DNA of 64,000 nt, taken from positions 1 through 64,000 of IMG/VR virus record IMGVR_UViG_3300027771_001853. One strand, written 5' to 3'. The notes below the pieces were generated by a model. The model was not told the origin of the DNA, made no database searches, and saw only the letters and a program-made list of their open reading frames with translations. This document shows positions 2,878-58,615 of this stretch, piece after piece; positions within the stretch are counted from its first letter, which is position 1; the number at the start of each line of letters is the position of its first letter. A program made the translations under genes and the position numbers.

Positions 2878-4254
2878 TTAGACTTTTCTATCGTTTCTAT
2901 CCTTAATATTTCGTTTGGAGTAGAACTTGTTGTAGAGTTTCCGAGCTTGGTTGGCTCTCTTATTACGTTTCCTTGGGTTGTTGGATGATGATGGTCTCTC
3001 GAAATTAACCATGAAGGATATAGCAGCGTTTTCTGGGGTGTCAGTATCTAATAGTTTCCTATATGCTTTGTTCTCCTTGTTTTGTAGTTCGTACCACAGA
3101 TATTCTAATTGAGCTGTTGGGTCGGTCACAGTTAACTTCTTATCTCGGGCAAATTGATTTAATCTTAATAGTCTAGATTTATGCCATTGTGCTAACCCCA
3201 TAGATGTCCCACCGTCACCTATAACTCCTGTCTGCCAAGTACCGGCAGACTCCGTTTTAATGTTACCGGCAATACCGGCGGCTTGTGGTGATGTTAAACC
3301 CTTTCCTACAAAGAACTCTATAATTGTATTAGGGTTAACCTTAACTGAACCAGGGTAAAATTTACCACTTAAAGGTAGTACAAAATTAGCGTTTGGGTCT
3401 ACAAGTCCTTGATTCTCAGCGTTTTTAACAGCAGTAGGGTCATTTTCCTGTGGTTTCTTATTCACATTAACTTTATCCTTCATGGCCTTTAACATTTCAG
3501 TTGTGATTACCTCACCAGTATCCGATGGGAAATAATCTCTTTGGAACGCGTTAACCGCTGCTAGTGTTTCAGGACCATATTTACCATCTATACCGAACTC
3601 AGGTAAAATATAATTTCGGGCAATTAAGTCTGTCTGCATTTCTTCTACTTGGCCCTCCATTTCTGTAGGTCCGGAACCACCAGTACATTTACTACCACAC
3701 CCATCCCATAATATAATGGTCCCTTCGTCTCTTTTTACATCTGGTTCATCAACCACACTAGAACTTTCTATATGATGTTCAGGGTCCACCCATTTATTCT
3801 TATACTTTAATCCGAAATGTAAGTGAGCACCTAATGAATTACCAGAACCAGTTTTACCTCTATCACCACCTGTAACACCTATAAGTTGCCCTTTAGTGAC
3901 TTTTTCATTCTTATTAACTTTGATTTGACTCATATGACAATAAGAACTTTTATAACCATTATTATGTTTAATAATTATCATACCACCACAAGCACCACTA
4001 TCTCTATTAATTTTACTAACAGTACCATCTGCTATAGCGAATGCTTGGGTGTAGTCCGCTTTATAATCTGTACCATTATGTGCTCTACATTTTTGACCAC
4101 TTAGACATCGTTTAGGGGAAAACTTACTATTAACACTAAGGCCACCCTTTAATGGAGCACCTAAAACCGCTTCAGATAAAACCTTGATTTTCTTGGGTTT
4201 AAGACTTTCTATTAGAATTTCTAATTGCTCACTACTGATTATTACATTTCCCAT
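2878..4254 (-). CDS. Multidomain peptidoglycan hydrolase: M23 peptidase + PG-binding + phage tail lysozyme-like domain
   Basis: HNGTD and HLHF M23 motifs; GIDGKYGPETLAAVNAFQ PG-binding motif; AAGIAGNIKTES...GLAQW...FERP lysozyme motifs. Confidence 0.85.
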   Translation of the reverse strand: MGNVIISSEQLEILIESLKPKKIKVLSEAVLGAPLKGGLSVNSKFSPKRCLSGQKCRAHNGTDYKADYTQAFAIADGTVSKINRDSGACGGMIIIKHNNGYKSSYCHMSQIKVNKNEKVTKGQLIGVTGGDRGKTGSGNSLGAHLHFGLKYKNKWVDPEHHIESSSVVDEPDVKRDEGTIILWDGCGSKCTGGSGPTEMEGQVEEMQTDLIARNYILPEFGIDGKYGPETLAAVNAFQRDYFPSDTGEVITTEMLKAMKDKVNVNKKPQENDPTAVKNAENQGLVDPNANFVLPLSGKFYPGSVKVNPNTIIEFFVGKGLTSPQAAGIAGNIKTESAGTWQTGVIGDGGTSMGLAQWHKSRLLRLNQFARDKKLTVTDPTAQLEYLWYELQNKENKAYRKLLDTDTPENAAISFMVNFERPSSSNNPRKRNKRANQARKLYNKFYSKRNIKDRNDRKV

Positions 4255-4257
4255 ATA

Positions 4258-7200
4258 TTATAAGTATTCAAGTCCGTACCTTCCCACCCCTTGGTACCAC
4301 TTATCCGGTGGTATCATCTCCTTTAATTCTGAATTATCAGCATTTACGTAAGTTTCTAAATCATCCGTCTTGATTCTTCTATTTACGGTCCATTGTTTTA
4401 CAGAACTGTCCGTTTCTACTTCAGTAAACTTAGGGTCTGGACGGTCTACATCATCATCTTCCTTACCAACTGGTTCGTCACTTATTTGCATAGAAATTTT
4501 AATCAGTGTATCATCAGTTTTACCATCATAATCCATAATATTTATCTGGTTTTTCCCCACTTTATCCACAAAAAACACATTACCTCCAGATAAAACGTCC
4601 TCCAATCCAAAATCGGGTTCCCTCGCCTGTCCGTTTCTACGCTTAAACCCTAACCTTTTAAGAATCTCCATAAACTTTATATTGTTATTTTTTCCCCTTC
4701 TTAGTGAATCCTCATCTTCTAATTCATGAAGTAACCAATTATTCATTAATGTGTTAATTTCTTCACCCACATCATCTTCATAACCATAACCATCATAATA
4801 AATGTCAGATAGATTACTCTCAATTTCATTCCAAGGTTCCTTTAACATCTCTGAGAAGTTAGTGACCCCAAACATTTTAATAATCCATAATAGTTGGAGC
4901 CAACTAAGTTTTACAATTGTTTTATCCATATAAAAATCATCCTCAAATAAAAGTTCATCTGAAATGTGTTTGGACATCTCACTTGCTCTATGAGCCCCTA
5001 TACCATACCCTAATGCACTTATTATATCATTTAACACTTCAGTGACATCACCACCACCTATACGTTTCATTGGGTCTAGGATATCACCTTCGCCAGCATC
5101 CCTACTATTTTGTTGTATATATTCCTCATTTCCAGTTAACTCCATTACTTTATTCCAGTTAGCCAACGTATCTTTACTCCAATGTACAGCCGTATAATCA
5201 ACTTCAGTTTCTTCAACATCTTCATAGGGATGGTCGTACGTATTAGTGTCCCTACCAACCTCATAGAAATATAAATCATCGTCCGTTAACAATAACACGT
5301 CCTCCACATACCTATTCTTATCCATACGTATTTCCACACCATTATCCGTTATGTGTATTTGGTCCAATGAAGAAGAATACCCGTATGGGTTGGGTTCGTT
5401 ATCATATGATATAGTGGTGTCTTCACCCGTAAAATCTTCTAATGTATCATAGATATCCTCTTGGTTAGTTACACCTCTTTTTTCCTCATTCACCATAATA
5501 CCGTAGATTGATTTAAGAAAAGTGTCATTGGAAGATTTGTCACTATTTGATGTGGTATTGTTGGTACTGTTCATAAAGCCCTTTATATCCTCACTAGTCC
5601 TTATCATGTTAAATTTAATTTTCTCCCTCTCATCAAATTCTACATTAAAAAACTTGGCTAGTTCTGGTTTATCACTTAGATACCTTTTAAACTCTACCTT
5701 CTCTAAATACTTTAGACTATTCCCCAGCTTTTCGTAGAACGAATAAAAAGGTTTATCACGTAGAAACGGCACTTTTCCCTGATGGTGCATAATGTGAGTC
5801 TTTCTTCTATACCCCTCCTGTTCTTCTGTAATATATATTGTCCCTGTATTTAACAATTTTTTAATAAAATGGTCACCCAATCCTCCACAAACCGACTCAG
5901 AAATTAACGAACAAAAAGATTCTTTATTTAATGGTACCACAACTTTAACTTTACCATTATCGAACATAGTCCTAACCTTAATATTCTTATTTTCGATTTG
6001 TTCATTTAATTGTGGTTCCTTAAAAGTCATCCTACTATTCACCCAATCAGTTAAAATGTTAACCATTAAATCAGCTTCTTCTTGTGGTACTCCACGTTCT
6101 ACCATACCAGGAATTGTTTGGTATAGGACTTCTATCGGCACAAACCCTTCATGGTCGTAAGAATACAATTGCATCTTACCACCATCATAATCTAATTCAC
6201 CTTCTGGGTGTGGATATATACCAAAACTATTATCCAGTGCATCAAATAGTTGTGTGGTTAAGTCTATATTTTTTTTATCTTCTGGTTTGTCATACTGTTC
6301 TTGTAATTGTGAGTATATTTCAGGAAATAACTTACCATAGCTCTTAACCAACCTTCCCGCTAAACTATTAGCTTCATCTTCTATGGGTCCACCTATTTCT
6401 GGATGTGGTTTATCTATTAACCCATCTTCTTTTTGTTTATGGTGGACTAACTCATGAGCAATACTTCTTAATATATCAGCTAATTGTCTTTGGTACCCTC
6501 TAACCTTAACTATTTCTTTTTTATTATTATAGTAACCTGTAGTATATTCGGATGTTGGTTCTACCTCTACTTTAATTGGTGGTGAATTTTTAATCCCTAA
6601 TTCATTCTTAACAAAATCCACAAAATCATTATATCGTGCTTCACTATAAGGGTGGGTGGTATCTATAATATCTATTTGGGATTCACTTAATTCTAATTCC
6701 TCTTGTGTTTGGTATACGTAATCATAAAGTTCATCACCTAATAATTTCCCAAATGCTGAATCACTAGGGTAGTGAACTTTTGCCATGTTACGACTGTACG
6801 CGATATCCTCACCTATTTGTTTAAGTTCATTACCATACTCAGGGTATAAATCTGATAGGTACCTACCTATGAATCTACCTTGAGTAGCGTGACCAGAAGG
6901 GTATGACGGTGTAGAAGCACTCTGTAATGTTTCACTATCTAACGTTAACCCTTTTGCGTTTGCTATTTGCCATGGTCTTGGTCGATTATAGTGGTATTTT
7001 AATTTAAGAACTATAGCTCTCACTCCATTCATTACCTCCTTTATTTCATTAGTTGGGTACTCTAATTGTTTAGAGTTTAGGAAAATTTTAAAGTGTTTGT
7101 CCACATTATCAGCACTCTCAACCAACTCACTATCCACTTTTATGGTATCTAAATAATCTAGTTCTTCCTCAGTCGTATCTGATTCATTTTGTGGTGGTGG

Positions 7201-15110: not shown

Positions 15111-15545
15111 ATGGATTTATATCTCTTCGATTTCGACAATACTTTAGTTCAAACCCCTTATCCCGACTCTATATATTATATGGACAGAAAAGAAAGTTTA
15201 AATGATTCCCGTTGGGAATTTAAAATTAACCAAGAAGTAAAATCATATTATGATAAAGCTAAGAAAAATAATAATAATAGGGTAGTCTTATTATCTAATA
15301 GAGTTAGGGAAGTTGAAAAACCTTTAAGGGAGTTACTATCTAGACTTGGGTATGTGTTTGACGATTATCTTTTAATCGAGAATGGTGAGAGGTCTAAAGC
15401 TAAAAGACTATTAGACTACTTGGAGATTATAGATGAGGTGAAGAACATTCACTATTGGGAAGATAAAGATAAACACATAAAGGACGTTTCAGAAAATGTA
15501 CCTGAAAAGTATGGTGTTGGTGTGACTGTTCACAAAGTTACTTAA
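15111..15545 (+). CDS. HAD-superfamily phosphatase (RNA-repair/PNK 3'-phosphatase-like)
   Basis: FDFDNTL (DxDxT) motif I, LSNR motif II, WED motif IV. Confidence 0.75.
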   Translation: MDLYLFDFDNTLVQTPYPDSIYYMDRKESLNDSRWEFKINQEVKSYYDKAKKNNNNRVVLLSNRVREVEKPLRELLSRLGYVFDDYLLIENGERSKAKRLLDYLEIIDEVKNIHYWEDKDKHIKDVSENVPEKYGVGVTVHKVT

Positions 15546-16227
15546 CCTTCTCTATTGTTTCGTGAGGTCTACTAGCTAAATCGTACGGACTATCATTGTT
15601 AACGACCCACACATGATTAAACTTATCTACCATATTACCTATATTATCACTAACCAATTGGTGGTAACTGGTTACCATTTCAGGTGATAGACTCCTACTC
15701 CTTTTTTCATTTCTTTCATGAGCTACACCCAAACTAGTTTTAACATAAATTAAAGTAGTTTCGTAACCATTGTCGTTAGCTAACCTCCAAACATCTTCCA
15801 TAACTTTTTGTTGTCCACCCCCAGCATCAAACACCACATTGGGTAACTCTTTCCTATCTTGTTCTAAAAATTGTTTAAGAAACCTAACCGTTACATTTCT
15901 AGGGTCAGAGGTGGTGAATGATTGACTAAGAATTTCTTGATATCCTTCTGGTGTGGATATGTTAGCTTCCCAATTATCACCCCATAGTTTCTTTGCTAAC
16001 TGAACTCGGTAGTTATCAACATTAAATTCTTTTATGTTAGGTAAATCTATTAGATTTCTAGAGACAAAACTTTTACCAGCACCTGGTCCACCAACTACCA
16101 CTATAAAATTATTATCTAGTCTATCAAACCCAACTACTTTAGCCTCAGTCATTAATATTTTTTCAATCTGTGATTCCGTCACCATAATATTAAATGGACC
16201 TTTCTTTTTCTTAATTAAGTTCTTCAT
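15538..16227 (-). CDS. P-loop kinase (AAA_33/zeta-toxin/PNK-like)
   Basis: VVVGGPGAGKS Walker A, VVFD, RNEKRSR lid. Confidence 0.8.
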   Translation of the reverse strand: MKNLIKKKKGPFNIMVTESQIEKILMTEAKVVGFDRLDNNFIVVVGGPGAGKSFVSRNLIDLPNIKEFNVDNYRVQLAKKLWGDNWEANISTPEGYQEILSQSFTTSDPRNVTVRFLKQFLEQDRKELPNVVFDAGGGQQKVMEDVWRLANDNGYETTLIYVKTSLGVAHERNEKRSRSLSPEMVTSYHQLVSDNIGNMVDKFNHVWVVNNDSPYDLASRPHETIEKVK

Positions 16228-16864
16228 ATTTCTCCGATACTTTATCCCAGTTAACCACCTTCCAAAAGTTGTTTATATATTTTTTTCTATCCGACATGTA
16301 ATTTAAATAGTAAGCGTGTTCCCACACATCTAAACCCAATAATGGTTCTCCAAGATTATCCATTAAGGGGTTGTCTTGGTTTGGTGTGGTAACTATTTTA
16401 AGTCTACCGTTTTTTAAAACCAACCAACACCAACCAGAACCAAATACTTTTCCAGAGTCTTCATCAAATTGTCTTTTAAAATTATCTAAACTACCAAAAT
16501 CTTTATTTATCTTAGTTTTTAACTCTTTAGATAGTTTTGTTTTATCTGGTGTTATATAATCTCTAAAAAATAAACTATGGTTATAATAACCACCAGCATT
16601 ATTTCTAGTAAATGCATCATAACTCTTAATGCCTTTAATTATCTTTTCGATATCTTTGGTGGGATTTTTTCTTTTAGATAATGCTTCGTTTAGTTTAGTC
16701 GTATACCCTTTATAGTGTTTATTGTAGTGTTCCCACATTGTTTCATAACCCACAAAGTCTTTTACAGAATTGTAGTCGTAAGGTAAAGTAACTCTTTTGA
16801 AGAATGTTTTCTTAGCTTCTGTTAATAAAGTACTTCTTAATATTTTTTTAATTAAATTATTCAT
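16211..16864 (-). CDS. sodA: Fe/Mn superoxide dismutase (Mn-type signature) with N-terminal extension
   Basis: HYNKH, NAGGYYNH, FGSGWCWL, PNQD, DVWEHAYY. Confidence 0.92.
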   Translation of the reverse strand: MNNLIKKILRSTLLTEAKKTFFKRVTLPYDYNSVKDFVGYETMWEHYNKHYKGYTTKLNEALSKRKNPTKDIEKIIKGIKSYDAFTRNNAGGYYNHSLFFRDYITPDKTKLSKELKTKINKDFGSLDNFKRQFDEDSGKVFGSGWCWLVLKNGRLKIVTTPNQDNPLMDNLGEPLLGLDVWEHAYYLNYMSDRKKYINNFWKVVNWDKVSEKYEELN

Positions 16865-17526
16865 CACCATTTTCTACATGACCAATACCTAGCTTTCCAT
16901 TTTGGGCCAGGTGTATCACATTTATGTCTCGCTCTAAAAGATTTTCTTGCCTCTGGGTTGGACTTTCTTATCTTCATAGTCTTTTCCCCTTTCTTTTTAG
17001 CGGATGTCCCACCATGACCAAAGTTAACTTTAACCACATTACCTTTATCATTTTTAACATACACTTTAAACTTCTTAATATCACCCCTTGTGGGTTTATT
17101 AAGTGTTACTTTTCTTCCTTGGTACTCCGCTTCTTGCAATATACTTTCAGTTTTGAAACCCTTACAAGCAGCTGGAGTCGGTCTACATCTTGGTTTCTTT
17201 CTTTCTTCACCCTCACTTCTACCACAAGCTTTACATTTACCATCATTACAGGTATTACAATCTACCCAACCACTAGTCTTACCTGGAGCTCCTTGTCTTT
17301 CAAACCAACCATGTAATCCTTTATCTTTTTCTTTAGAGAAATCTGTTTTTTCTTTTATGTCTTCTTCACTTAGCCCTTTCCATATTTTACCAGCCCTACA
17401 TTTTACCACAGCTCCTGAAGCATAAGCAGATGGCCAAACATCGTATTTTCTTTTAGCTATACTAGTACACCTATCGTCCTTTTTCTTTTTAGTTTCTTCT
17501 AGTATTCTTTTTATTATATCTCTCAC
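16864..17526 (-). CDS. Basic two-module phage protein (probable virion component)
   Basis: MRDIIKRILEE leader; internal ILQE before AEYQGRKV...KKFKVYVK...SFRARHKC module. Confidence 0.7.
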   Translation of the reverse strand: MRDIIKRILEETKKKKDDRCTSIAKRKYDVWPSAYASGAVVKCRAGKIWKGLSEEDIKEKTDFSKEKDKGLHGWFERQGAPGKTSGWVDCNTCNDGKCKACGRSEGEERKKPRCRPTPAACKGFKTESILQEAEYQGRKVTLNKPTRGDIKKFKVYVKNDKGNVVKVNFGHGGTSAKKKGEKTMKIRKSNPEARKSFRARHKCDTPGPKWKARYWSCRKW

Positions 17527-18398
17527 AAACTTAAATTTTTATACTTATTTATTACTTTTTTTAATTCTTTACTATATCTAGAATTACCCCATTTAATAAT
17601 TAAGCCATCTAAATCATCAAGCACGTCATTTTCTTCAGGACTTGGCCCAACTGTTTCTGTTATTGGGGCTTCTTCTTTTTTAAATCCTTCAGGTCCTTTA
17701 CCTGAACCGTAACCACTATCTGGGTAAATAATTTCATATCCCTTTATGTCTTGTTGTTCTCTACCTTGTCCTTCCCATTCGATAATATCTTCCTGATATC
17801 CCTTGTCATGCGACCATTCCCAAGAGTCATATGTACCATCCTCATCATATACGACAGTATCTTCCGCATCATCTTCATCGTAAGCCACTACTGTAACTTC
17901 CCATTCAATACTTTTATAGACCTGCACATTTTCCTCCATAGATAAAGTATATCTTTTTAGTGCTCTTAACTTAAGTTGGTCGTATCCGGTTATGGTGTTA
18001 TTTTTTAACCCATCAAAGTTATCGTGTGCTGCCCAAAATATTTTGTCTATTAGAGTACCATAATCTGTGCTTTTTGCATCTAACCCTATTAATTTAAGGA
18101 CGTTCAATGCCTCACTTTGCCGTTCCCATAAATTATCCCCAAGCTGAGTTCTACTAGAGAACCAATCTTTGTCATGTGCATTTACTAACAATTTTACACC
18201 TTTAAAAAATATATTTTTAGTTATAGTAGTAGTACTATACTTTTTATCCGTACGATTAAGCGTTCGGGATGTGTATGATGTTGGTGGGACCATATCATTT
18301 GAAGGCTCGGAGTCATAGTGAGGGTCGGCCCAAGTTCCACTACCCATCATCGTATCATCTGTTTCTTCTCGTAATACAGTTTTAATTATACTTTTCAT
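17523..18398 (-). CDS. Hypothetical protein; free-standing paralog of a giant-ORF module
   Basis: LKLIG..WAAHDNF..LKRY..VVAYDEDDA matches the module in 4258-15066. Confidence 0.75.
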   Translation of the reverse strand: MKSIIKTVLREETDDTMMGSGTWADPHYDSEPSNDMVPPTSYTSRTLNRTDKKYSTTTITKNIFFKGVKLLVNAHDKDWFSSRTQLGDNLWERQSEALNVLKLIGLDAKSTDYGTLIDKIFWAAHDNFDGLKNNTITGYDQLKLRALKRYTLSMEENVQVYKSIEWEVTVVAYDEDDAEDTVVYDEDGTYDSWEWSHDKGYQEDIIEWEGQGREQQDIKGYEIIYPDSGYGSGKGPEGFKKEEAPITETVGPSPEENDVLDDLDGLIIKWGNSRYSKELKKVINKYKNLSL

Positions 18399-18403
18399 TA
18401 CTA

Positions 18404-18410
18404 ATAAATA
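18404..18410 (-). promoter_or_regulatory. Phage TATTTAT motif (putative late promoter)
   Basis: Same heptamer precedes many genes; 5 nt before this ATG. Confidence 0.55.
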
Positions 18411-19025: not shown

Positions 19026-20675
19026 ATGAAAAAACAACAACTTTTAGAACAACAAGAAAAGATAATGAAAATGTTCTCATATTCACCTGGTATGACAATA
19101 TCAGAGAATGATGAACAATATAGTGAAGAAACAACTCAAGTGAACGAAATAGCTCCATTAGCCGCTATAGGTTGGGGGTTAACTGCTGCTTGGGCAGGAT
19201 ATGAAATTTGGAAATGGGCTACAAACACATGGGGAGCTAAAACTCTGGGTCCTAGATTAAAAGCAGCAACTGACCCAGGTACTTGGGAAGAAATCACAAA
19301 CTCTATGAAACAAACTTCTATTAAATTAGGGGAGGATATCTCGGGTAAGTTGAAGGTTATGTCAAGTTCGGATGCTGGTCAACTAGCTGACTTTCTGTAT
19401 AATGCAATGGATGGAGCAGGGACAGATGAAGAAGAAATAAGAGAGGCAATGGATAAAATGAGTTCATTTATGGATTTAGCTTACGTAGCGGATAAATTTG
19501 GTACTAGAGAAGGTTACACTTTGTGGGGTTGGTTGGATGACGAATTGAGTCAGTCATACTTTAAAACATACGTTATGCAACCTATGAGTTCTAAACCACT
19601 TCTTATATGGGATGGAAAACAATACAATAGTTTAGAAAAGTGGGCAGCAGAATTAAGTAAGTTGGTTGATGATAAATCAGCACAACCAAAGAATGATGAC
19701 CAAAATAAAAAGACTATTATAAATGCACTTAAAGGTAAAAAAGGTTCTTGTATGGAAGAATACCTAGCAAATGCAGTAATAGGGTCTACAAAAAAAGGTG
19801 TTCCATTCCTAAAATATACGGAAGGTGGGGTAGAATTAAATGTTTTTGCTAATGGTAGATTTATTGACGTAAAAACTAATAAGATGGGTACGATTCAAAA
19901 TTGTGATGAAGTGGTTACTGAATCCGTAAGTAGTATTTTAAACTTAAACTGGGTATTAGGTTCACTTACAGAACAATTTAAAGTGGTATATGATGATGAC
20001 AAAGAAAACGTTGTTACTATAAAAGATAAAGAAGTTGTTAAAACTGATGATACTGGTGGTGAAGAAGTTGAGAAAGAGGTAGTTACTAAATCTAAATGGA
20101 CGAAATACACTGGAGACCCAACAAAAGATGTTGTAAAAATGATGCATTACAACAAAGATGCTAATTCAGTAATTAAACAAATTCAAAAAGCTATAGGAGC
20201 TAAAGAAGATGGTTACTATGGTAATAACACTAAGAAAGCTGTAATGGGTTGGCAAAAGGAGAACGGACTGAAGGTTGATGGTTCAATTGGTCCTGAAAGT
20301 TGGGCTAAAATAACTACATCTACTGATGAGGTGGGTGGTGAAACAACAGTTGATACAGCGGTAGAAAAAGCAATAGAAACAGAAGCTAGTAAAGTAGTAC
20401 AACAAGTTCAGCAAAAGAAAATTAATGTACCTACAGCAAGAGAAAAATTAATGAAAGATGTTTTAGAATCTCAAGGTAATAAGAAAATGCAAAAGAACTA
20501 TTGTCAAAATTTAATAGCGTTCGAGGCTGGTATGTTAAAAAGTAATATGGAAAAAGCAACTAACTTAAAAGCTCTAGGAGCTTGTTATGATGACCATAAC
20601 TTTGGGGCTGGGGGTATGTCTAGAAAAGTTAGAAAATCTTACAACTTAAAGACATCAGGTAACAACATTAGTTAA
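19026..20675 (+). CDS. Annexin-repeat + peptidoglycan-binding domain protein
   Basis: LYNAMDGAGTDEEEI...LDDELS annexin repeat; IQKAIGAKEDGYYGNNTKKAV..WQ..GLKVDGSIGP PG-binding motif. Confidence 0.75.
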   Translation: MKKQQLLEQQEKIMKMFSYSPGMTISENDEQYSEETTQVNEIAPLAAIGWGLTAAWAGYEIWKWATNTWGAKTLGPRLKAATDPGTWEEITNSMKQTSIKLGEDISGKLKVMSSSDAGQLADFLYNAMDGAGTDEEEIREAMDKMSSFMDLAYVADKFGTREGYTLWGWLDDELSQSYFKTYVMQPMSSKPLLIWDGKQYNSLEKWAAELSKLVDDKSAQPKNDDQNKKTIINALKGKKGSCMEEYLANAVIGSTKKGVPFLKYTEGGVELNVFANGRFIDVKTNKMGTIQNCDEVVTESVSSILNLNWVLGSLTEQFKVVYDDDKENVVTIKDKEVVKTDDTGGEEVEKEVVTKSKWTKYTGDPTKDVVKMMHYNKDANSVIKQIQKAIGAKEDGYYGNNTKKAVMGWQKENGLKVDGSIGPESWAKITTSTDEVGGETTVDTAVEKAIETEASKVVQQVQQKKINVPTAREKLMKDVLESQGNKKMQKNYCQNLIAFEAGMLKSNMEKATNLKALGACYDDHNFGAGGMSRKVRKSYNLKTSGNNIS

Positions 20676-20701: not shown

Positions 20702-20729
20702 AAAAAGGGACTTATCGTCCCTTTTTTTT
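20702..20729. terminator. Bidirectional intrinsic terminator
   Basis: A5-GGGAC-TTATC-GTCCC-T8 between convergent genes. Confidence 0.8.
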
Positions 20730-38887: not shown

Positions 38888-39358
38888 TTAATCTAAAGGG
38901 CCATACTTTTCACTAGCCATTGCATCACCAAAGTCTTTAGACCCCGGTAATTCAAAAGAAATATAGTAAGGGTGTTTATCATAATCTTTTGTGGTGGTTC
39001 CATAATAAGAATCAATAGAATATGATATTATGTCACCTCTTCGTGTAAGAGACAAGATTATTTCTTTTATCTTGTCCTTCCAATTACTCTGTTTAGTTGG
39101 GTCAAAAGTTGTGTCATCTGGATTATGCATTTGTAAATCTGTAGGGACCTTAATGGACTCAATTGTGTTTGGTAGTTTATCCACAAAATCTAACATCTCT
39201 TTATAGTCATTTGTTTTAAAGACATATGGGTTAGTTCTAAATTCTTCAACCTCACCTCTTCTATGGTAAGTCCCAGGAAATCCCTTTGATGATACCCTAT
39301 GGTGTTGGACAGGGTTCTTGTATTCTTCTTTTAATATATTTCTAATTAGTTTTTTCAT
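38888..39358 (-). CDS. Hypothetical phage protein with ILKE leader
   Basis: MKKLIRNILKEE. Confidence 0.7.
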   Translation of the reverse strand: MKKLIRNILKEEYKNPVQHHRVSSKGFPGTYHRRGEVEEFRTNPYVFKTNDYKEMLDFVDKLPNTIESIKVPTDLQMHNPDDTTFDPTKQSNWKDKIKEIILSLTRRGDIISYSIDSYYGTTTKDYDKHPYYISFELPGSKDFGDAMASEKYGPLD

Positions 39359-45227: not shown

Positions 45228-45650
45228 TTAGATTTTGTCACCGGTAGCAATACCAGCTTTAAAGTCTAATTTAACATTAAGGGTAAAATCTCCCTTTTTA
45301 TTAGTTAAGGTATAATCTGAATGAAATTTACCTTGTTGGCTTTTGTGTGATTTTTTAAACCCGACTATATCAAAATTATGGTCTTTAAGGAAATCCCTAA
45401 AGTGCTTGTCATATTGTTTATATGCTTTAGCTTCTTTTGAGTTTGATGGGTCTTTCGGTTCTGCGTCAACTTCAAACATCTCCCCTTCTTTAGTTTCGTG
45501 ATGTCCTTCCTGTGTAGGTGCTGGTTTACGTTTTCTAGGGCTTACTGGGTTGTCAGAAAAAGGGTAAGATAATTTCTCATCATCTTCCTTTAGTACTTTA
45601 TTGATTATGTTAACCAATTCTTTTTCCGTTAATTTTATAATGTTTGACAT
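45228..45650 (-). CDS. Hypothetical phage protein with LTE/VLKE leader
   Basis: MSNIIKLTEKELVNIINKVLKED; TATTTAT at 45662-45668. Confidence 0.7.
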   Translation of the reverse strand: MSNIIKLTEKELVNIINKVLKEDDEKLSYPFSDNPVSPRKRKPAPTQEGHHETKEGEMFEVDAEPKDPSNSKEAKAYKQYDKHFRDFLKDHNFDIVGFKKSHKSQQGKFHSDYTLTNKKGDFTLNVKLDFKAGIATGDKI

Positions 45651-45680
45651 AATATTGATTTATAAATAAATATAACGTAT

Positions 45681-46130
45681 TTACCGTTTTTCCAATCCTT
45701 TTATTTTTTTCCACATACGTTTAAGACGAGTTTCATCACCAAAAAATACTTTTGCTATAACCAAACCAACAAATCTAATCATTGTATAGGTTAAACCTAT
45801 TGCTAGCATAAAGAATAATAGTGTTGGGAAGTACACTATAGAAAACGATATTAGGTATTCTTTAGTACTATCAAAGGGTCTATATGTTTTTTGTGAATTA
45901 AAATTTTCCGTTCTCTCTTGTAATACAAGTGGGTCTTCTCCCCATTTAACTTGTGGTGGTGTGAGTTCACTACAATTAACACAGTACCCACTTTGGTAAG
46001 TACCGTATAAAGAACTTAAAAGGTGCAACACCATAAAAAATATAACTATGTTTTTAAGTTTGAATATTGTTTTACGGTATTCAAAAAGTTTACTACTTAA
46101 CTTGTTTAATATGTTTAATATTTTTTCCAT
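45681..46130 (-). CDS. Membrane protein
   Basis: Two hydrophobic segments. Confidence 0.6.
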   Translation of the reverse strand: MEKILNILNKLSSKLFEYRKTIFKLKNIVIFFMVLHLLSSLYGTYQSGYCVNCSELTPPQVKWGEDPLVLQERTENFNSQKTYRPFDSTKEYLISFSIVYFPTLLFFMLAIGLTYTMIRFVGLVIAKVFFGDETRLKRMWKKIKGLEKR

Positions 46131-46314
46131 CTGGATTTTCTTTATCTAATTCTAACTCTTCGTCTTCAGTAGTCAAGTCGTCAGCTACAGGAATGGGGTG
46201 GTCCCCATTCAAAGGTCTGTCTTGTGGTGCTCTTCTAACAGAAAAAACTCTACCTGGTGATATGTAGTTACCAGCTACCGCTTCTTTTACTATTTCTATT
46301 AAAGTATTAATCAT
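46093..46314 (-). CDS. Small phage protein with IVKE leader
   Basis: Start re-assigned to MINTLIEIVKE, 4 nt after TATTTAT (46319-46325). Confidence 0.55.
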   Translation of the reverse strand: MINTLIEIVKEAVAGNYISPGRVFSVRRAPQDRPLNGDHPIPVADDLTTEDEELELDKENPDGKNIKHIKQVK

Positions 46315-46328
46315 ACCCATAAATATGT

Positions 46329-46802
46329 TTATTTTTCCCAACTGATATTCTTAACCTCAATACTTTGCCAATGTCGTTCACACCCTATCCCCAATAATTT
46401 TAAATAGTTTTTTAATTCGTCACTTAATAAGTCTCTTAGTTTTTCGCGTATCATTTTGTGGGCGTTGTGGCCCCAAATACGGTCAGAATTACCTTCATAC
46501 CATCTACCACAGCTAAGTTTATATTCAGCTACCTTACTTATATCTCTCATATATGCTGAGCCGGAGTAAGATTGGCAAGTTGTGGCCTTACCGGATACTT
46601 TAACATTAACAAGAATTCTATTCCCTCTCGGGTTTAGTGGTGTTTGCTTTACATCCCAGCCCTCATTTTCACTCACAATATTAGTTATTCTACATTTAAC
46701 ATCTAACTCACGACTCCAATTTCCAGCATCTTCTGTTATATTGTTTATATGGAATATCTTTTTTCTAATTATTCTTTTCGCTTTTAATGGTAATCTTTTC
46801 AT
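46329..46802 (-). CDS. Hypothetical protein
   Basis: 157-aa ORF; host-type promoter upstream. Confidence 0.65.
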   Translation of the reverse strand: MKRLPLKAKRIIRKKIFHINNITEDAGNWSRELDVKCRITNIVSENEGWDVKQTPLNPRGNRILVNVKVSGKATTCQSYSGSAYMRDISKVAEYKLSCGRWYEGNSDRIWGHNAHKMIREKLRDLLSDELKNYLKLLGIGCERHWQSIEVKNISWEK

Positions 46803-50716: not shown

Positions 50717-51115
50717 TTATTCCCTAGTCTTAATATACTCTAGAATGGTTGTTGCCATTTGTTCATCAAAAAACTCTGGGTCTAATTCAGCAACTATTTC
50801 ACTTGTAGTGTCATCACTTTCTAACTCACCAGTTTCGAGATATATCACGTACTTAGGTGGGCCAAAAACAGTTTCATATTCTAAAACTAACTGACCACCT
50901 TTATATGGTAAATTTTTAATCACACTATTTTCTTCTTCTGGTTCGACATGTTGTGGGTCACCAGGTTCAGCGTATTTTTGTTGTGTTTTTTTAAAAGAAT
51001 CGTCATAGAAATAATCAGGATTACCACCTGGAGTATCATTTCTAGAGTCTTCTTTAATAATTTTTTTAACCAAGTTTTGTATGTGTTGTGGGGATATGTT
51101 TACCTTTCTTTTCAT
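50717..51115 (-). CDS. Hypothetical phage protein with IIKE leader
   Basis: NLVKKIIKED. Confidence 0.65.
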   Translation of the reverse strand: MKRKVNISPQHIQNLVKKIIKEDSRNDTPGGNPDYFYDDSFKKTQQKYAEPGDPQHVEPEEENSVIKNLPYKGGQLVLEYETVFGPPKYVIYLETGELESDDTTSEIVAELDPEFFDEQMATTILEYIKTRE

Positions 51116-52539
51116 TATTGGGTTAGTTTTTTAAGTTTTTCTACCATAGCGTTTTGAATCCATTTCACCATTTTAACATATTTTGTTTGTTGTCCAGATT
51201 TCTTTTTGTATGGTTTGTCAAAATTTCTTGTCGCTCTACTAAAAAAGTTTAACCCACTTATGTTAGTTATACATTTATGCCCTCCACTATTAGACTGTAT
51301 AACATCCCATATAGAAACTGTTATTCTATCCAGATAACTTTTTTCGGTCTCAGTTAAATTTGCCCAAGGTGTATCCACCATTTTAATTGTATTTCCATAC
51401 TCTGGGGAATCTTCAGGTGGCATATTTTGTAAATGGTCCTTATATAAAGCAAATAAATCAGACGATTTAAAACCAATACTTTCTTCTTCAGCTTTAGTTT
51501 CACCTATACGTTTTATAACAGAAATGGGTACTTGGTGTCTTTGTAGTCCTGGTTTAATGGTCTCCAACACTTCTTGAGCTACATCTGCTAAGTTCACACC
51601 TTTAATAGCTCTATCTTCTTTAAACGGATTACATGACGCTTGTACTAGACCCATAGGCCAAGCTATAACTAGAAAATCAGCGTCAGGGTATAATTTAAAT
51701 GGTGTGTACCTATCGTAAGACCCTGGTTTAAACATACTACCTCCACCGTATTGAGATATGATACCATCTTCGTAAGTTACATTAGCGTTTTTACTTTGTG
51801 CGTCCACATAACTTTCTTGGTTTTTTTGCATGTCTTCTGGTGTAGCAAATCCCCTTTCTTTTGCTATCCTCCTAATGTTATTATAGATGTTTAACAGAGA
51901 AGGTTCTGATGTCATAACTAACTCTTCTAGAAACCCTGGTTTATTTTTATAAGCTAATAACAATTTATTTGTTAATAGTGCTAACATTTGTTTATTCTTA
52001 GGTACACCACCTTCTTTATCCAAGTCGTACAAATAATTCATAACCTCTTCAGGTTTAATCCCATACTTCGCATAATCAGCACTATCCATGGTAGAAATCA
52101 TCCTAATATCATCATTAGGGAATATATCTTGTGGGCTTACTATTTGAGATACTGTCTCAACGTTTGACCTTGCTCCTCTAAATTGGGTTGACGTATCATC
52201 TTCTACCCCAGTTTGGCTATCGTGATGGTCAGTATGTATAATCATCTGTGGTTTACCGTGAGCAAAATCCACCAATACTGGCATAACATCACCCCTAGCT
52301 TTATCTATTAGTGGTTTTTGTACTGAAAATTCCTTATCACCATATTGGATTACATGACTACCTATAACTTTTATCCCGTAAGATTCCAAATAATTCTTCA
52401 TCGCTAAAGCAGTTGTAACCCCATCCGTATCTTGGTGGAAGTATATTTCCGCTTTAGGGTATCTTTGAGCTAACGCGGTAATATTACGTATTCCGCTTTC
52501 TTTTAATAAGATTTGTGAGAGTGTATTAACTAATTCCAT
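51115..52539 (-). CDS. DHH-family phosphoesterase
   Basis: FHQDTDG, LVDF, TDHH, GGHK motifs; ILLKE leader. Confidence 0.75.
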   Translation of the reverse strand: MELVNTLSQILLKESGIRNITALAQRYPKAEIYFHQDTDGVTTALAMKNYLESYGIKVIGSHVIQYGDKEFSVQKPLIDKARGDVMPVLVDFAHGKPQMIIHTDHHDSQTGVEDDTSTQFRGARSNVETVSQIVSPQDIFPNDDIRMISTMDSADYAKYGIKPEEVMNYLYDLDKEGGVPKNKQMLALLTNKLLLAYKNKPGFLEELVMTSEPSLLNIYNNIRRIAKERGFATPEDMQKNQESYVDAQSKNANVTYEDGIISQYGGGSMFKPGSYDRYTPFKLYPDADFLVIAWPMGLVQASCNPFKEDRAIKGVNLADVAQEVLETIKPGLQRHQVPISVIKRIGETKAEEESIGFKSSDLFALYKDHLQNMPPEDSPEYGNTIKMVDTPWANLTETEKSYLDRITVSIWDVIQSNSGGHKCITNISGLNFFSRATRNFDKPYKKKSGQQTKYVKMVKWIQNAMVEKLKKLTQ

Positions 52540-52551
52540 ATTTCATAAATA

Positions 52552-53160
52552 TTACGCACATCCACCTGAAGAACAAAATAAGGTGGAGGTCGCTATTCTT
52601 CTTTCATTATGCCCCCAGTCACCGTTTATTATGGTGTTAGATGCTTTTTTATAATTTCCTTGTTCAATATCCACAATAAGTGTAGGAGAATGTATAAAAG
52701 CATTACAACCTATATTATACGCTATATCAATCATTGCACGATACATACCTAAAGTTAGTAAACGATTATTCGTGTCTCCAGTTGTCGCTCTAGATTGCCA
52801 ACTTTTTATACATCTTGCCGCTTCGTTAATATCAGGAACCGTTAATGCTTTTGCTGTTTGGAGGGTCATCTCTTTATTGTTATCCCTATATTCTTGAATA
52901 ATTGATTCTTGGGTTGTCCCGAATCCAATAGTTAGTGTACCGTAAATTGTGCCTCCAGTATATCTAATAGGTGTTCCTTCTTTCCACTTTCTCATATCGT
53001 CATACACATAAGGAATGTGGTTTCCATATACGTCTCCTTCATGTTTCCTTATATGGTCAAACAATTCTTGGCCAGCTACATTTCCAGTCCCTTTTTGAAA
53101 ATCCAAAAAAGTCGGTGTAGTTTCTTCTACTAATAACGATAATGTATGAAGTAATCCCAT
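52552..53160 (-). CDS. Phage lysozyme (GH24-like)
   Basis: HEG..VYDD..TIGFG; AMIDIAYNIG. Confidence 0.7.
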   Translation of the reverse strand: MGLLHTLSLLVEETTPTFLDFQKGTGNVAGQELFDHIRKHEGDVYGNHIPYVYDDMRKWKEGTPIRYTGGTIYGTLTIGFGTTQESIIQEYRDNNKEMTLQTAKALTVPDINEAARCIKSWQSRATTGDTNNRLLTLGMYRAMIDIAYNIGCNAFIHSPTLIVDIEQGNYKKASNTIINGDWGHNERRIATSTLFCSSGGCA

Positions 53161-53183
53161 AACTATAAATACTCACTTAATTA

Positions 53184-54397: not shown

Positions 54398-55600
54398 TCA
54401 CCTATATCTACCATACCTATCTAAATTCCCATCAGGTTCTATAAAACTCCATTCTTCCCAGTTGGGGTCTATTTCATTACTCAATAAATCTTCTAACCAA
54501 GGTATTAATTTAATCGGTATCATAATTTCAGGGTCATATGGTACGTACCAATCTTCATTTCTCACTTCAAGTACCTCACTATTACCTTCTTCAAATGCTT
54601 CCCACACCCAAGTAGTGTATTGGTTACCATAAGCTAACCCATATAATTTAAAAACCTGTATAATATCATCCATTACCCCTCTTACCTTAACTAATGCAAA
54701 TTCAATATTTTCTTCAACATCTCGCCAACTACCATCTCTTTTTCTCATTGCTTCTGGCCATCGTCTTTGTGCATTAAAATATGCCTCCAACCATACCCTT
54801 AATTCTTTCCGGTATTTACCATCAATAATATTGAATGCTATGTCCTCATCTACATCTTCTTCTTCTTCTGTTTCTTCTTGTTCTAAAATGTGGTCTCCAG
54901 CTGAGTGTTTGTGGGACGCGTGAGAAGTTAATTGTACTTCTTCTAGTTCTTCATCAAACACATCTGAATCCATATAATCTATAAAGTCAGAAGTAAAAAC
55001 CCCTTCTGTTAAATTATCTGGTGGTGTGTTTCTGTTTTTAAGTTCACGTAATCTCCTAACTAACCTATTAAATAGATTTTTTATTGATAGTATTCCGACG
55101 GAGAATAATAAAGCTTTAAAATATTGGGGTGCCATCTCCATGGTTAGATGTTCTGAGTTCGTGTAGGCCCTGATAGCGTCTATAATTGGTAGAAACATAA
55201 ACGTAAACGAAGCTATGTCTAGTAGGTTGGTAACTACGAATCCCGAGGTTTCCGCTATTTTTATACCAATATCTTCTACGGTTTTTAAAAAAGTAACTGA
55301 TTTGTTTAGTGTCGGTTCTAGTCCCCTACCTTTAATAAGGTTTACTAGTTTTTTAATTTCCGCACTATTGTCCCTTATTACCAAAGCGACTGCTGCTATA
55401 AAAACCATAGCAATTTCTACTTCAGTAAACTTAGGGTCTTGATTTAATAACAAGTCTTTAACTGGACCATAAAATGCCGTTATACCAGCACCCCATGTGA
55501 GTGTTCCCTCTATGTGTACCCCCACACTATCAAGTAATTCTTTTAAAAAACTATCTTTAGTGTCTTGTTGTTCTAATATAAGTTCTATTTGTGTTTTCAT
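54398..55600 (-). CDS. Hypothetical modular protein (hydrophobic N-half, acidic C-half)
   Basis: MKTQIELILEQ leader; internal LTE and ILE; TATTTAT at 55608-55614. Confidence 0.7.
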   Translation of the reverse strand: MKTQIELILEQQDTKDSFLKELLDSVGVHIEGTLTWGAGITAFYGPVKDLLLNQDPKFTEVEIAMVFIAAVALVIRDNSAEIKKLVNLIKGRGLEPTLNKSVTFLKTVEDIGIKIAETSGFVVTNLLDIASFTFMFLPIIDAIRAYTNSEHLTMEMAPQYFKALLFSVGILSIKNLFNRLVRRLRELKNRNTPPDNLTEGVFTSDFIDYMDSDVFDEELEEVQLTSHASHKHSAGDHILEQEETEEEEDVDEDIAFNIIDGKYRKELRVWLEAYFNAQRRWPEAMRKRDGSWRDVEENIEFALVKVRGVMDDIIQVFKLYGLAYGNQYTTWVWEAFEEGNSEVLEVRNEDWYVPYDPEIMIPIKLIPWLEDLLSNEIDPNWEEWSFIEPDGNLDRYGRYR

Positions 55601-55631
55601 TACAACAATAAATACTAGTAGTTAGTCCAAT

Positions 55632-56532: not shown

Positions 56533-56533
56533 A

Positions 56534-58219: not shown

Positions 58220-58327
58220 CTATTTAAAACTTTATGTTTAGTTTATTAAAACAACTTTCTTGTCATTTCAATTATACTAAATAAAACTTTAAAAGGTAAG
58301 TTTACTAATAAGAAATTTATTTTTTGG

Positions 58328-58615
58328 TTACTCTTTATGAGATTTCCCTACCCTTCTCATTAATTTAAATTCGTAATCGTTATCGTTAGCCCAGTTTTCA
58401 ATATCGAAAATCGATACACTCATACCTGTACCAAAAGGAAGTTCCCGATGTTCACCCATTTTACTATCAACATGTACTATATTTTCACTCGGTGATTGGT
58501 AGATATTAATCGTTTTAGGGTTTTTGCCCCAACCCCCCTGGTTAGATAACCTAACATGACTCATCATCCCTAGGTAATCCTTTATCTCCAATTCTATTAA
58601 TGGCATAAGTTTCAT
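58328..58615 (-). CDS. Hypothetical phage protein
   Basis: Start at MKLMPLIELE, 5 nt after TATTTAT (58621-58627). Confidence 0.6.
   Translation of the reverse strand: MKLMPLIELEIKDYLGMMSHVRLSNQGGWGKNPKTINIYQSPSENIVHVDSKMGEHRELPFGTGMSVSIFDIENWANDNDYEFKLMRRVGKSHKE

What the first reader, a model, noticed from the sequence alone, without database searches (positions are those of the whole stretch)
2878..58615. Shared N-terminal leader ending in [IL]-x-E on about 15 genes, including metabolic enzymes: a capsid-loading system
Seen: leaders include MNNLIKKILRSTLLTE (SOD), MRDIIKRILEE, MKSIIKTVLREE, ...IEKILMTE (kinase), MDTRKILRE (NDT-like), MKKLIRNILKEE, MSNIIKLTE..VLKE, MINTLIEIVKE, ..LVKKIIKE, MELVNTLSQILLKE (DHH), MGLLHTLSLLVEE (lysozyme), MKTQIELILE, MGNVIISSEQLEILIE (M23-lysozyme) and MKKQQLLE (annexin). 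Most lie in units headed by TATTTAT/TACTTAT. trxA, the cyclophilin, nusG, glnII and rpsU lack such a leader. In SOD the leader is an extension ahead of the canonical fold. Known: T4 internal proteins carry a 10-aa capsid-targeting sequence ending in Glu that gp21 removes. Inference: the phage tags captured host-type enzymes for packaging and injects a ready-made toolkit (ROS defence, nucleotide handling, wall hydrolysis).
Basis: partly seen in the sequence, partly recalled or inferred. Interest (0 to 1): 0.82.

Follow-up and report, generated by a model that had tools for sequence, protein, structure and literature searches.

The report
Capsid-loading leader peptides in marine jumbo phage
About thirty genes of a 298-kb marine T4-like phage, among them an intact superoxide dismutase, start with a short swappable helix ending in hydrophobic-x-Glu, which is most likely a T4-style tag that loads proteins into the capsid and is then cut off by the head protease, though no protein data yet prove it.

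Summary
[IL]-x-E occurs in the first 35 residues of 131 of 300 genes. The discriminating signal is h-x-x-h-h-x-E, an amphipathic helix. It is enriched at N-termini about 5-fold over protein interiors and over composition-preserving shuffles (z 5-6).

Of the 14 listed genes, 7 are strong, 6 moderate and 1 weak. About 18 more lie outside the window.

The window belongs to a 297.6-kb marine phage with a T4-type head module, including a Peptidase_S77 (gp21) protease. Several lines point to T4-style cleavage and loading:
- The predicted capsid-protein maturation site (I-N-E|A) aligns with T4 gp23 L-T-E|A.
- The core protein next to the protease has the highest [IL]xE density in the genome.
- The same rule applied to T4 recovers IPII, IPIII, gp24 and Alt.
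- Leaders sit on unrelated folds and are swapped between orthologs, while the [ILV]-x-E junction is kept.
- All 16 strict leader genes lie in units headed by the late promoter TATTTAT. Tail proteins with that promoter lack leaders.
- Two Bacteroidota phages without an S77 protease show no enrichment.

Verdict: a greatly expanded variant of the T4 capsid-targeting and propeptide system. It is well supported in silico, but packaging, cleavage and injection remain untested.

The parts
17523..18398 (-). 291-aa ORFan. Class-1 leader MKSIIKTVLRE|E (residues 1-11). First gene of a four-gene late unit.
   Evidence: PSSM 18.8. TATTTAT lies 12 nt upstream. No Pfam, PHROG or Atlas function.
18404..18410 (-). 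Late-promoter element TATTTAT heading the unit 17523 > 16864 > SOD > kinase.
   Evidence: The same heptamer heads the sheath, protease, scaffold and terminase genes.
16864..17526 (-). 220-aa protein. Leader MRDIIKRILEE|T, and a second predicted site SILQE|AEYQGR at residues 132/133, ahead of a basic domain of about 90 aa (phrog_7595).
   Evidence: Across 67 distinct IMG/VR relatives the junction is P3 L/I/V in 67 of 67, P1 E in 65, and P1' A in 65.
16211..16870 (-). Fe/Mn superoxide dismutase. Its 18-aa leader ends LLTE|AKK, and the fold starts at about residue 25.
   Evidence: Pfam Sod_Fe_N and Sod_Fe_C. Metal ligands H48, H98, D181 and H185 are conserved. In the AF2 model the leader helix (residues 2-19) has pLDDT 50-61, residues 16-20 fall below 50, and the fold exceeds 85. 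Orthologs carry swapped leaders.
15538..16227 (-). P-loop kinase (AAA_33 / zeta-toxin-like). Leader-like MVTESQIEKILMTE|A counted from Met15. The start codon is ambiguous.
   Evidence: Pfam domain starts at residue 42. Last gene of the late unit.
25819..26706 (-). 295-aa protein of unknown function. Leader MKMDTRKILRE|Y.
   Evidence: PSSM 18.6. TATTTAT at 26723-26729. No support for 'NDT-like'.
38888..39358 (-). 156-aa ORFan. Leader MKKLIRNILKE|E.
   Evidence: PSSM 20.8. Downstream of a TATTTAT-headed gene.
45228..45650 (-). 140-aa ORFan. Class-2 leader with a KLTEKEL cap followed by IINKVLKE|D.
   Evidence: PSSM 20.7 and HMM 38 bits. TATTTAT at 45662-45672.
46093..46341 (-). Protein of 75-82 aa. 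Class-1b leader MINTLIEIVKE|A.
   Evidence: Shares the h-h-x-T-h-S/x-x-h-h-x-E pattern with 51115, 52552 and genome position 65208. Downstream of a gene with TACTTAT.
50717..51115 (-). 132-aa ORFan. Class-2 leader ending NLVKKIIKE|D.
   Evidence: PSSM 21.7 and HMM 39 bits.
51115..52539 (-). DHH-family phosphoesterase-like protein. Leader MELVNTLSQILLKE|SGIR.
   Evidence: Weak DHH hit from residue 32. The G001 ortholog (58% identical) has a different, shorter leader, MKKILSE|SGIR, with the same junction. TATTTAT lies 12 nt upstream.
52552..53160 (-). Phage lysozyme. Leader MGLLHTLSLLVEE|T plus a linker of about 25 aa.
   Evidence: Pfam Phage_lysozyme from residue 73. TATTTAT lies 11 nt upstream.
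54398..55600 (-). 400-aa ORFan starting MKTQIELILE|Q. Moderate leader.
   Evidence: TATTTAT lies 14 nt upstream.
2878..4254 (-). M23 peptidase + PG_binding_1 + tail-lysozyme protein. Leader MGNVIISSEQLEILIE|S.
   Evidence: Pfam. The leader resembles MKIIITESQLENIVSE of a relative. TACTTAT lies 12 nt upstream.
19026..20675 (+). Weak candidate.
   Evidence: No annexin hit. Fails the strict motif. TATTTAT lies 35 nt upstream.

Best explanation
The leaders are N-terminal propeptides of the T4 capsid-targeting-sequence kind.

Proposed mechanism:
1. The phage is a roughly 298-kb marine T4-like myovirus, probably of a Bacteroidota host. It builds its head on a scaffolding core.
2. Leader-bearing proteins are made late, together with the head proteins.
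3. The amphipathic leader helix (hydrophobic at positions -6, -3 and -2, Glu at 0) docks on the core, so the protein is enclosed in the prohead.
4. The gp21-family serine protease then cuts after [I/L/V]-x-Glu. This destroys the core and frees the mature proteins inside the capsid.
5. The mature proteins leave with the DNA at the next infection.

Candidate cargo: a Fe/Mn SOD, a P-loop kinase, a DHH phosphoesterase, wall hydrolases, a small basic protein, and many ORFans.

Shown here: the motif and its statistics, the protease, the aligned capsid-protein site, portability of the leader, and linkage to the late promoter.

Inferred, not shown: docking, cleavage, retention in the capsid, and ejection.
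For: 1. T4-order head module: portal, two small genes, Peptidase_S77 protease (90 bits against a cut-off of 27), acidic scaffold, gp23-type capsid protein. The catalytic His and Ser are invariant against T4 gp21.
2. T4 gp23 L-T-E|A and gp24 L-R-E|S align with I-N-E|A in this phage's capsid protein.
3. The 243-aa gene between portal and protease has the highest [IL]xE density of all 300 genes: 4.9 per 100 aa against a mean of 1.14 (p 3e-5). The scaffold ranks 7th.
4. The motif is N-terminal and enriched. This replicates in two related genomes with an S77 protease: G001 (z 6.4-6.8) and Flavobacterium phage immuto (z 6.1-6.6). It is absent from two Bacteroidota phages without S77 (z -0.3 to -1.1).
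5. The same rule in T4 picks out IPII, IPIII, gp24 and Alt. T4 CTS residues 4 and 7 (targeting) and 8 and 10 (processing) (PMC9026906) map onto motif positions -6, -3, -2 and 0.
6. Leader proteins are mostly unrelated in their mature parts.
7. Orthologs swap leader classes but keep the junction:
   - SOD: LLTE|AKK against NLLLE|AKK and NLILE|GKE.
   - DHH: LLKE|SGIR against ILSE|SGIR.
   - Family of the 220-aa protein: P3 L/I/V in 67 of 67, P1 E in 65 of 67.
8. All 16 strict leader genes lie in TATTTAT-headed runs, against 155 of 300 genes overall (p 1.7e-5). Sheath, tube, baseplate and neck genes have the promoter but no leader. Host-like enzymes without a leader are mostly outside late units.
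9. In the AF2 model the SOD leader is a separate helix, and its least confident residues lie exactly at L-T-E|A-K.
10. An S77 protease is present in 5 of 5 large relatives that carry leader proteins, and in 2 of 5 fragments.
Against: - There is no proteomic, N-terminomic or structural evidence for any of these proteins in virions.
- The motif is short and degenerate, so individual assignments are uncertain. This applies especially to 19026, 54398 and the kinase, whose start codon is ambiguous.
- The leaders share only a pattern with the T4 CTS, not sequence homology.
- The conserved L-x-E|A ahead of the basic domain also occurs, as V-Y-E|A, in contigs that look podovirus-like. It could therefore be partly structural.
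- About 30 cargo species, including an oligomeric metalloenzyme, would be an unusually large and bulky load to pass through a tail.
- The M23-lysozyme protein may instead be tail-associated.
- The 16 extra leader genes were curated by eye.
Confidence: 0.6

Rival explanations
1. The leaders are protease-removed propeptides whose main role is not delivery. They might act as zymogen-like inhibition or as assembly aids, for example keeping wall hydrolases inactive until head maturation, or acting as auxiliary core components. On this view the mature proteins stay in the capsid, or are degraded there, and do not act in the next host.
For: - Several leaders sit on peptidoglycan hydrolases.
- Multiple [IL]xE sites inside some cargo proteins and in the giant 3602-aa ORF could mean degradation.
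- The functions of T4 IPIII and IPII themselves remain unclear (PMC9026906).
Against: - An intact SOD active site and other intact enzyme domains are conserved across many phages. That argues for function after maturation.
- Precedent: T4 Alt and IPI act after injection.
Confidence: 0.15
2. The leader is an amphipathic-helix address for some other destination or fate: membrane association, oligomerisation, or recognition by the phage ClpP system as an N-terminal degron. On this view it is unrelated to the head protease.
For: - The phage encodes ClpP (195 bits).
- The helix is strongly amphipathic and basic.
- No direct evidence of cleavage exists.
Against: - The motif matches the gp21 rule (P3 I/L/V, P1 Glu, small P1') and the capsid protein's own predicted site.
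- The enrichment is found with S77-bearing phages and not in two S77-less Bacteroidota phages.
- The bona fide head proteins (capsid protein, scaffold, protease, core) begin with similar x-L-L-E or I-L-T-E starts.
Confidence: 0.12
3. The pattern is a by-product of translation constraints. AU-rich, unstructured 5' coding regions of late and often leaderless mRNAs would enrich Lys, Ile, Asn, Leu and Glu codons.
For: - TATTTAT lies only 10-14 nt before the ATG of about 17 genes, many of which are leader-like.
- Leader codons are very AU-rich.
Against: - Shuffling residues within each N-terminus keeps the composition but removes the motif (z 4.4-6.1).
- Late tail genes with the same promoter lack it.
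- AT-rich Bacteroidota phages without S77 show nothing.
- Junction residues are conserved across divergent orthologs.
Confidence: 0.06
4. Chance resemblance among a few hydrophobic N-termini.
For: The loose [IL]-x-E rule hits 44% of genes.
Against: The strict-motif statistics replicate in three genomes.
Confidence: 0.02

Closest known systems
T4 capsid targeting sequence (CTS) of internal proteins IPI-III, plus the propeptides of Alt and gp24, all removed by the gp21 protease at L/I-x-E
   Same: - Extreme N-terminal position. Class-1 leaders are 10-12 aa long.
- The h-x-x-h-h-x-E pattern, with Glu at the end.
- The leader is portable on unrelated proteins.
- A gp21-family protease sits in the same gene order, and the capsid-protein cleavage site aligns with T4's (PMC9026906).
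   Different: - No sequence homology to MKTYQEFIAE.
- At least three or four leader classes, including a 20-24-aa form with an L-T-E-x-E-L helix cap.
- About 30 genes per genome, against about 5 in T4.
- Cargo includes host-type enzymes such as Fe/Mn SOD.
- The leaders are widespread in marine and freshwater jumbo phages, probably of Bacteroidota.
- Untested experimentally.
Propeptide processing of head, inner-body and ejection proteins in phiKZ, 201phi2-1 and SPN3US (gp175 / gp245 proteases)
   Same: - Many head-internal proteins are cleaved after Glu by a diverged gp21 homolog.
- Propeptides contain redundant sites.
- Jumbo phages with a large protein cargo (PMC9026906, PMC7411985).
   Different: - Those proteases use S/A/G-x-E. 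Here P3 is I, L or V.
- Here the protease scores directly as Peptidase_S77, and the capsid protein is gp23-type.
Virion-packaged superoxide dismutase of giant eukaryotic viruses (Megavirus Cu,Zn-SOD; from my own recollection, not checked here)
   Same: The idea of a pre-packaged anti-ROS enzyme delivered with the genome.
   Different: A different enzyme family, a different virus realm and a different packaging route.

Membership tests
T4-type CTS / gp21-processed propeptide | The phage encodes a gp21-family (Peptidase_S77) prohead protease with catalytic His and Ser | tested here: met
   PF03420 scores 90.4 bits at genome position 240342-240809. phrog_207 matches. H94 and S157/S158 are invariant against T4 gp21.
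T4-type CTS / gp21-processed propeptide | Leader at the extreme N-terminus ending in L/I-x-Glu | tested here: met
   Class-1 leaders end at residues 10-13 and class-2 leaders at 19-22.
T4-type CTS / gp21-processed propeptide | Hydrophobic residues at the positions that T4 mutagenesis found critical (CTS residues 4, 7 and 8) | tested here: met
   The pattern h(-6) h(-3) h(-2) E(0) is shared. The same rule recovers T4 IPII, IPIII, gp24 and Alt.
T4-type CTS / gp21-processed propeptide | The same protease specificity acts on the major capsid protein and the core proteins | tested here: inconclusive
   The capsid protein's I-N-E|A aligns with T4's L-T-E|A, and the core protein has the top [IL]xE density. 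This is consistent, but the cleavage itself is not observed.
T4-type CTS / gp21-processed propeptide | Sequence homology to the T4 CTS (MKTYQEFIAE) | tested here: not met
   Only the pattern is shared. No leader resembles the T4 decapeptide.
T4-type CTS / gp21-processed propeptide | The protein is present in the capsid and the leader is removed in the mature virion | not testable with these tools
   Needs virion proteomics and N-terminomics.
phiKZ-type propeptides | Cleavage motif with a small residue at P3 (S/A/G-x-E) | tested here: not met
   P3 is L, I or V in 67 of 67 family junctions and in the leaders.
Fe/Mn superoxide dismutase (for 16211-16870) | Both SOD domains and the four metal ligands | tested here: met
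   Pfam scores 53 and 139 bits. H48, H98, D181 and H185 are conserved across 30 sequences. The AF2 model has pLDDT 89.5.
Sec / lipoprotein signal peptide | An uninterrupted hydrophobic core of about 10 or more residues after a basic N-region | tested here: not met
   Leaders have a charged residue every 2-3 positions. True signal peptides are seen on other window proteins such as the TonB receptor and the T9SS protein.

The most novel reading that the evidence does not exclude
Roughly a tenth of this phage's genes encode cargo that is addressed to the capsid by interchangeable leader cassettes and injected as ready-made proteins. That is about 30 proteins, including an active Fe/Mn SOD, a kinase, a phosphoesterase and wall hydrolases. 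If so, T4-like jumbo phages of marine Bacteroidota carry the largest and most modular protein-delivery system known in phages, and they evolve it by leader swapping.
Probability: 0.35. Interest if true: 0.8.

Novelty: new variant of a known kind. Interest (0 to 1): 0.62.

Why it matters
If the leaders work as proposed, a simple sequence rule would predict the injected proteome of a large and globally distributed group of uncultured marine and freshwater jumbo phages. That group covers hundreds of IMG/VR contigs, and this phage is found in at least 20 marine metagenome runs.

It would also show that 'auxiliary metabolic genes' such as SOD can act as pre-packaged proteins, rather than only as genes expressed after infection.

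Finally, it would give a natural set of short tags for loading foreign proteins into phage capsids.

Tried and rejected
- **Megablast of 12 kb against GenBank phages:** no match.
- **Small HMM of the class-2 leader:** it found only its own seeds above decoy level, so it was not used for counting.
- **Crude regex leader list against a TATTTAT directly upstream:** only a modest association (OR 2.2, p 0.03). The regex picks up membrane and Rossmann N-termini, so it was replaced by the strict set and operon-level units.
- **Function of the ORFan cargo:** Pfam, PHROGs and the ESM Atlas gave nothing.
- **Literature search for the leader strings:** nothing found. A search for phage SOD packaging also found nothing relevant.
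- **RNA evidence:** no served RNA run holds this phage.
- **The bS21-phage paper (PMC9723584):** it describes a different gene arrangement and has no N-terminal data.
- **Ideas considered and set aside:** signal peptides, chance, and codon or translation bias (see the rival explanations).


Full report
**What the window is.**
The 64-kb window is the first fifth of a 297,623-bp IMG/VR phage record with 34.7% G+C, estimated 93% complete. A simple ORF call gives 300 genes. Genome positions 236.7-244.1 kb hold a T4-order head module:
- a portal;
- a 243-aa gene and a 143-aa gene;
- a Peptidase_S77 (T4 gp21) prohead protease, at 90 bits against a cut-off of 27;
- a very acidic 493-aa scaffold-like protein;
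- a gp23-type major capsid protein.

The nearest cultured relatives by capsid protein are Flavobacterium phage immuto, Rhodothermus phage RM378 and Microcystis phage Mel-JY01, at about 36-42% identity. The window also encodes a SusC-like TonB-dependent receptor and a protein with a T9SS sorting domain. Together these point to a Bacteroidota host. Nearly identical DNA occurs in at least 20 marine metagenome runs.

Every quoted N-terminus is there. The definition '[IL]-x-E' is not discriminating, however. It occurs in the first 35 residues of 131 of 300 genes and is only 1.6-fold enriched.

The real signal is an amphipathic pattern, h-x-x-h-h-x-E, typified by D-L-I-K-R-I-L-R-E:
- The stricter hhxxhhxE form occurs in 15 N-termini, 5.2-fold over protein interiors.
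- Shuffling residues 2-30 within each protein leaves only 3.6 (z 6.1).
- Even [IL]-x-E shows an excess of about 30 genes over shuffles (z 4.4).
- A position matrix iterated on N-termini finds 17 against 3 expected.

By eye the leaders fall into four classes:
- Class 1, short: M-K-x-L-I-K-x-I-L-x-E.
- Class 1b: M-x-L-h-x-T-h-S-x-h-L-h-x-E. It is found on the DHH protein, the lysozyme, 46093 and genome position 65208.
- Class 2, long: M-K-x-h-x-L-T-E-x-E-L-x-x-L-I-x-K-V-h-K-E.
- Class 3: L-T-E-S-E-K-x-R-I-x-G-L-H.

The weak one is the 'annexin', which is in fact a PG_binding_1 protein. 'NDT-like' has no support. About 18 further leader genes lie outside the window, mostly at 65-95 kb and 267-295 kb.

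**The protease and its likely specificity.**
The protease aligns with T4 gp21 and the immuto protease, with the His of E-L-N-H-P and the Ser of G-I-S-S-R-G invariant.

In the capsid-protein alignment, the known T4 sites gp23 L-T-E|A-E-I-G-G and gp24 L-R-E|S-T-T-T fall on H-L-I-N-E|A-T-Q-A-D in this phage and I-V-S-E|A-N-V in immuto. T4's rule, cleavage after L/I-x-E, is taken from the review PMC9026906.

The 243-aa gene between portal and protease occupies the position of the T4 core proteins gp67 and gp68. It has the highest [IL]xE density of all 300 genes, with 12 sites, or 4.9 per 100 aa against a genome mean of 1.14 (p 3e-5). The scaffold ranks seventh.

The capsid protein, the scaffold, the protease and this core protein all begin with x-L-L-E or I-L-T-E within their first 8-15 residues.

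**Match to the T4 capsid targeting sequence.**
A pattern search confirms the decapeptide M-K-T-Y-Q-E-F-I-A-E on two T4 genes. Applying the rule h-x-x-h-h-x-E (Tyr and Trp allowed) to the first 20 residues of T4 ORFs flags IPII, IPIII, gp24 and Alt, all of them known gp21 substrates.

According to PMC9026906, T4 CTS residues 4 and 7 govern targeting and residues 8 and 10 govern processing. These are exactly positions -6, -3, -2 and 0 of the motif found here. The resemblance is one of pattern and length, not of sequence.

**Portability.**
All-against-all BLAST shows that leader proteins are mostly unrelated in their mature parts.

*The SOD.* The Pfam domain starts at residue 27. Cellular SODs start about five residues before the L-P-Y motif, which is at residues 29-31 here. 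The four metal ligands are conserved.

The AF2 model has mean pLDDT 89.5. It shows a detached helix at residues 2-19 (pLDDT 50-61), with residues 16-20, that is L-T-E|A-K, below 50. The fold itself exceeds 85.

The closest metagenomic orthologs keep M-K-D-L-I-K-N-I-L-R-E-S-F-L-T-E|A-K-K. Others, at 72-76% identity, carry different leaders, M-K-V-R-V-S-K-N-Q-F-N-L-L-L-E|A-K-K and M-K-I-I-I-T-E-S-Q-Y-N-L-I-L-E|G-K-E. A 237-aa SOD family with an extension rich in I-x-E sits in a 151-kb T4-like contig, next to gp13-like and sheath genes.

*The 220-aa protein.* Its family has more than 595 IMG/VR loci. A conserved basic domain of about 90 aa (phrog_7595) is preceded by very variable N-terminal parts that start with class-1, class-2 or other leaders. 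In 67 distinct members the junction is P3 L51/I10/V6, P1 E65, P1' A65.

*Orthologs in a second genome.* Against the complete 321-kb relative G001, the junctions are conserved while the leaders differ:
- DHH: L-L-K-E|S-G-I-R against I-L-S-E|S-G-I-R.
- 73503: L-V-L-E|Q-S-R against L-I-L-E|Q-S-R.
- Core protein: I-L-T-E|S-Y-S-N against K-L-L-E|S-Y-S-N.

**Link to the protease, and controls.**
An S77 protease is present in 5 of 5 large relatives carrying such proteins, and in 2 of 5 fragments that are 34-64% complete.

| Genome | S77 protease | Genes with h..hh.E in residues 2-30 | z against shuffles |
|---|---|---|---|
| G000 (this phage) | yes | 10.0% | 5.5 |
| G001 | yes | 11.5% | 6.4 |
| immuto | yes | 12.1% | 6.6 |
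| Cellulophaga phage phi17:2 | no | 4.2% | -0.3 |
| Bacteroides phage crAss001 | no | 2.8% | -1.0 |

Figures are, and S77 status is. This argues against a generic Bacteroidota or AT-rich translation effect.

**Timing.**
TATTTAT is found within 40 nt upstream of 67 genes against 3.8 expected. TACTTAT is the best one-mismatch variant.

TATTTAT heads the sheath, protease, scaffold, terminase, baseplate and tail genes. A gp55-like late sigma candidate exists. TATTTAT is therefore most likely the late promoter, analogous to T4's TATAAATA.

All 16 strict leader genes lie in TATTTAT-headed same-strand runs, against 155 of 300 genes overall (p 1.7e-5). For the 32 curated genes the figure is 31 of 32. 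Sheath, tube, baseplate wedge and neck proteins have the promoter but no leader.

NusG, cyclophilin, thioredoxin, the GlnA-like protein, bS21, DnaK and DnaJ have neither a leader nor a late unit.

**Interpretation.**
The best explanation is a much expanded, sequence-divergent version of the T4 CTS and propeptide system. A leader helix docks cargo to the scaffolding core. The S77 protease then removes the leader after [ILV]-x-E, and the mature cargo stays with the DNA and is probably ejected.

I put this at about 0.6, because nothing shows the proteins in virions or the cleavage itself. The rivals are:
- cleaved propeptides without delivery (0.15);
- another address, such as membrane, ClpP degron or oligomerisation (0.12);
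- translation bias (0.06);
- chance (0.02).

**Novelty.**
The principle is known. PMC9026906 itself suggests that the CTS may be a general way for T4-like phages to load proteins. Four things appear new:
- the scale, at about 10% of genes;
- the several interchangeable leader classes;
- the host-type enzymes among the cargo, notably an intact Fe/Mn SOD;
- the wide distribution in uncultured aquatic jumbo phages.

I found no paper describing these leaders. The verdict is a new variant of a known kind. It is directly testable in the cultured phage immuto.

Noticed in passing
window 18404-18410, 52545-52551, 53165-53171, 55608-55614, 58621-58627 and about 12 more genome-wide: In about 17 genes the late heptamer TATTTAT starts only 10-14 nt before the ATG. 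If transcription starts a few bases downstream, as at T4 late promoters, these late mRNAs are leaderless or nearly so. Most other occurrences sit 20-29 nt upstream.
   Followed up: partly
window 32099-34504 (-): The phage encodes a SusC-like TonB-dependent receptor (CarbopepD_reg + Plug + beta-barrel) with a signal peptide, which is an unusual gene for a phage. It sits in a block of signal-peptide proteins (34671-37894) next to a 1321-aa protein with a T9SS C-terminal sorting domain (39355-43320).
   Followed up: partly
window 4258-15066 (-): Giant 3602-aa ORF headed by TATTTAT. Its only recognisable domain is PAP2 phosphatase (aa 2684-2777), and it has a significant excess of [IL]xE sites (63, p 8e-4). 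The leader-bearing M23-lysozyme gene lies directly downstream. It might be an ejected or internal giant protein. Other giant ORFs of 4512, 2739 and 2205 aa lie elsewhere in the genome.
   Followed up: partly
window 54199-54387 (+), 20728-21282, 21301-21726, 57191-58219, 62651-63334, 63346-64497: Host-type genes without leaders: ribosomal protein bS21, NusG, cyclophilin, a glutamine-synthetase-like protein, ClpP, and a MetK-like SAM synthetase (judged from its N-terminus only).
   Followed up: partly
L126 (T4 NC_000866 18966-19130, gene 61.1): The 54-aa T4 hypothetical protein gp61.1 begins MKTFKEFIKE, very close to the IPII/IPIII capsid targeting sequence MKTYQEFIAE. I do not know whether this has been noted before.
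   Followed up: no
window 16864-17526 (residues 133-220); L029-L108: A basic domain of about 90 aa (phrog_7595, starting A-E-Y-Q-G-R-K-V) is extremely widespread in IMG/VR phages, with more than 595 loci. It is fused behind many different N-terminal parts. It may be an internal, DNA-associated protein, analogous to the T4 IPs.
   Followed up: partly
genome 279416-279718 and 267238-268026 (L015, L014): Some small proteins carry two leader-like modules in tandem, for example a second I-K-L-N-E-N-D-L or T-I-N-E-K-Q-L-L-R-E about 30 residues in.
   Followed up: no
genome 212380-213078 (L010:17380-18078): Weak match to the T4 gp55-type late sigma factor (phrog_234, E 5e-4; Sigma70_r2, 20 bits). It is a candidate reader of the TATTTAT late promoter. 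A full sigma-70 homolog lies at 85993-86787.
   Followed up: partly
L018-L021 (Flavobacterium phage immuto): The cultured relative has its own leader variant, M-E-N-F-D-L-K-K-F-L-V-E-N-K-L-T-x-N-S-x-h-h-x-E, on four genes. It also has M-K-K-S-Q-h-x-x-h-h-x-E starts, including a 73-aa gene inside the head module. TATTTAT and ATATTTA are enriched upstream of its genes as well.
   Followed up: partly
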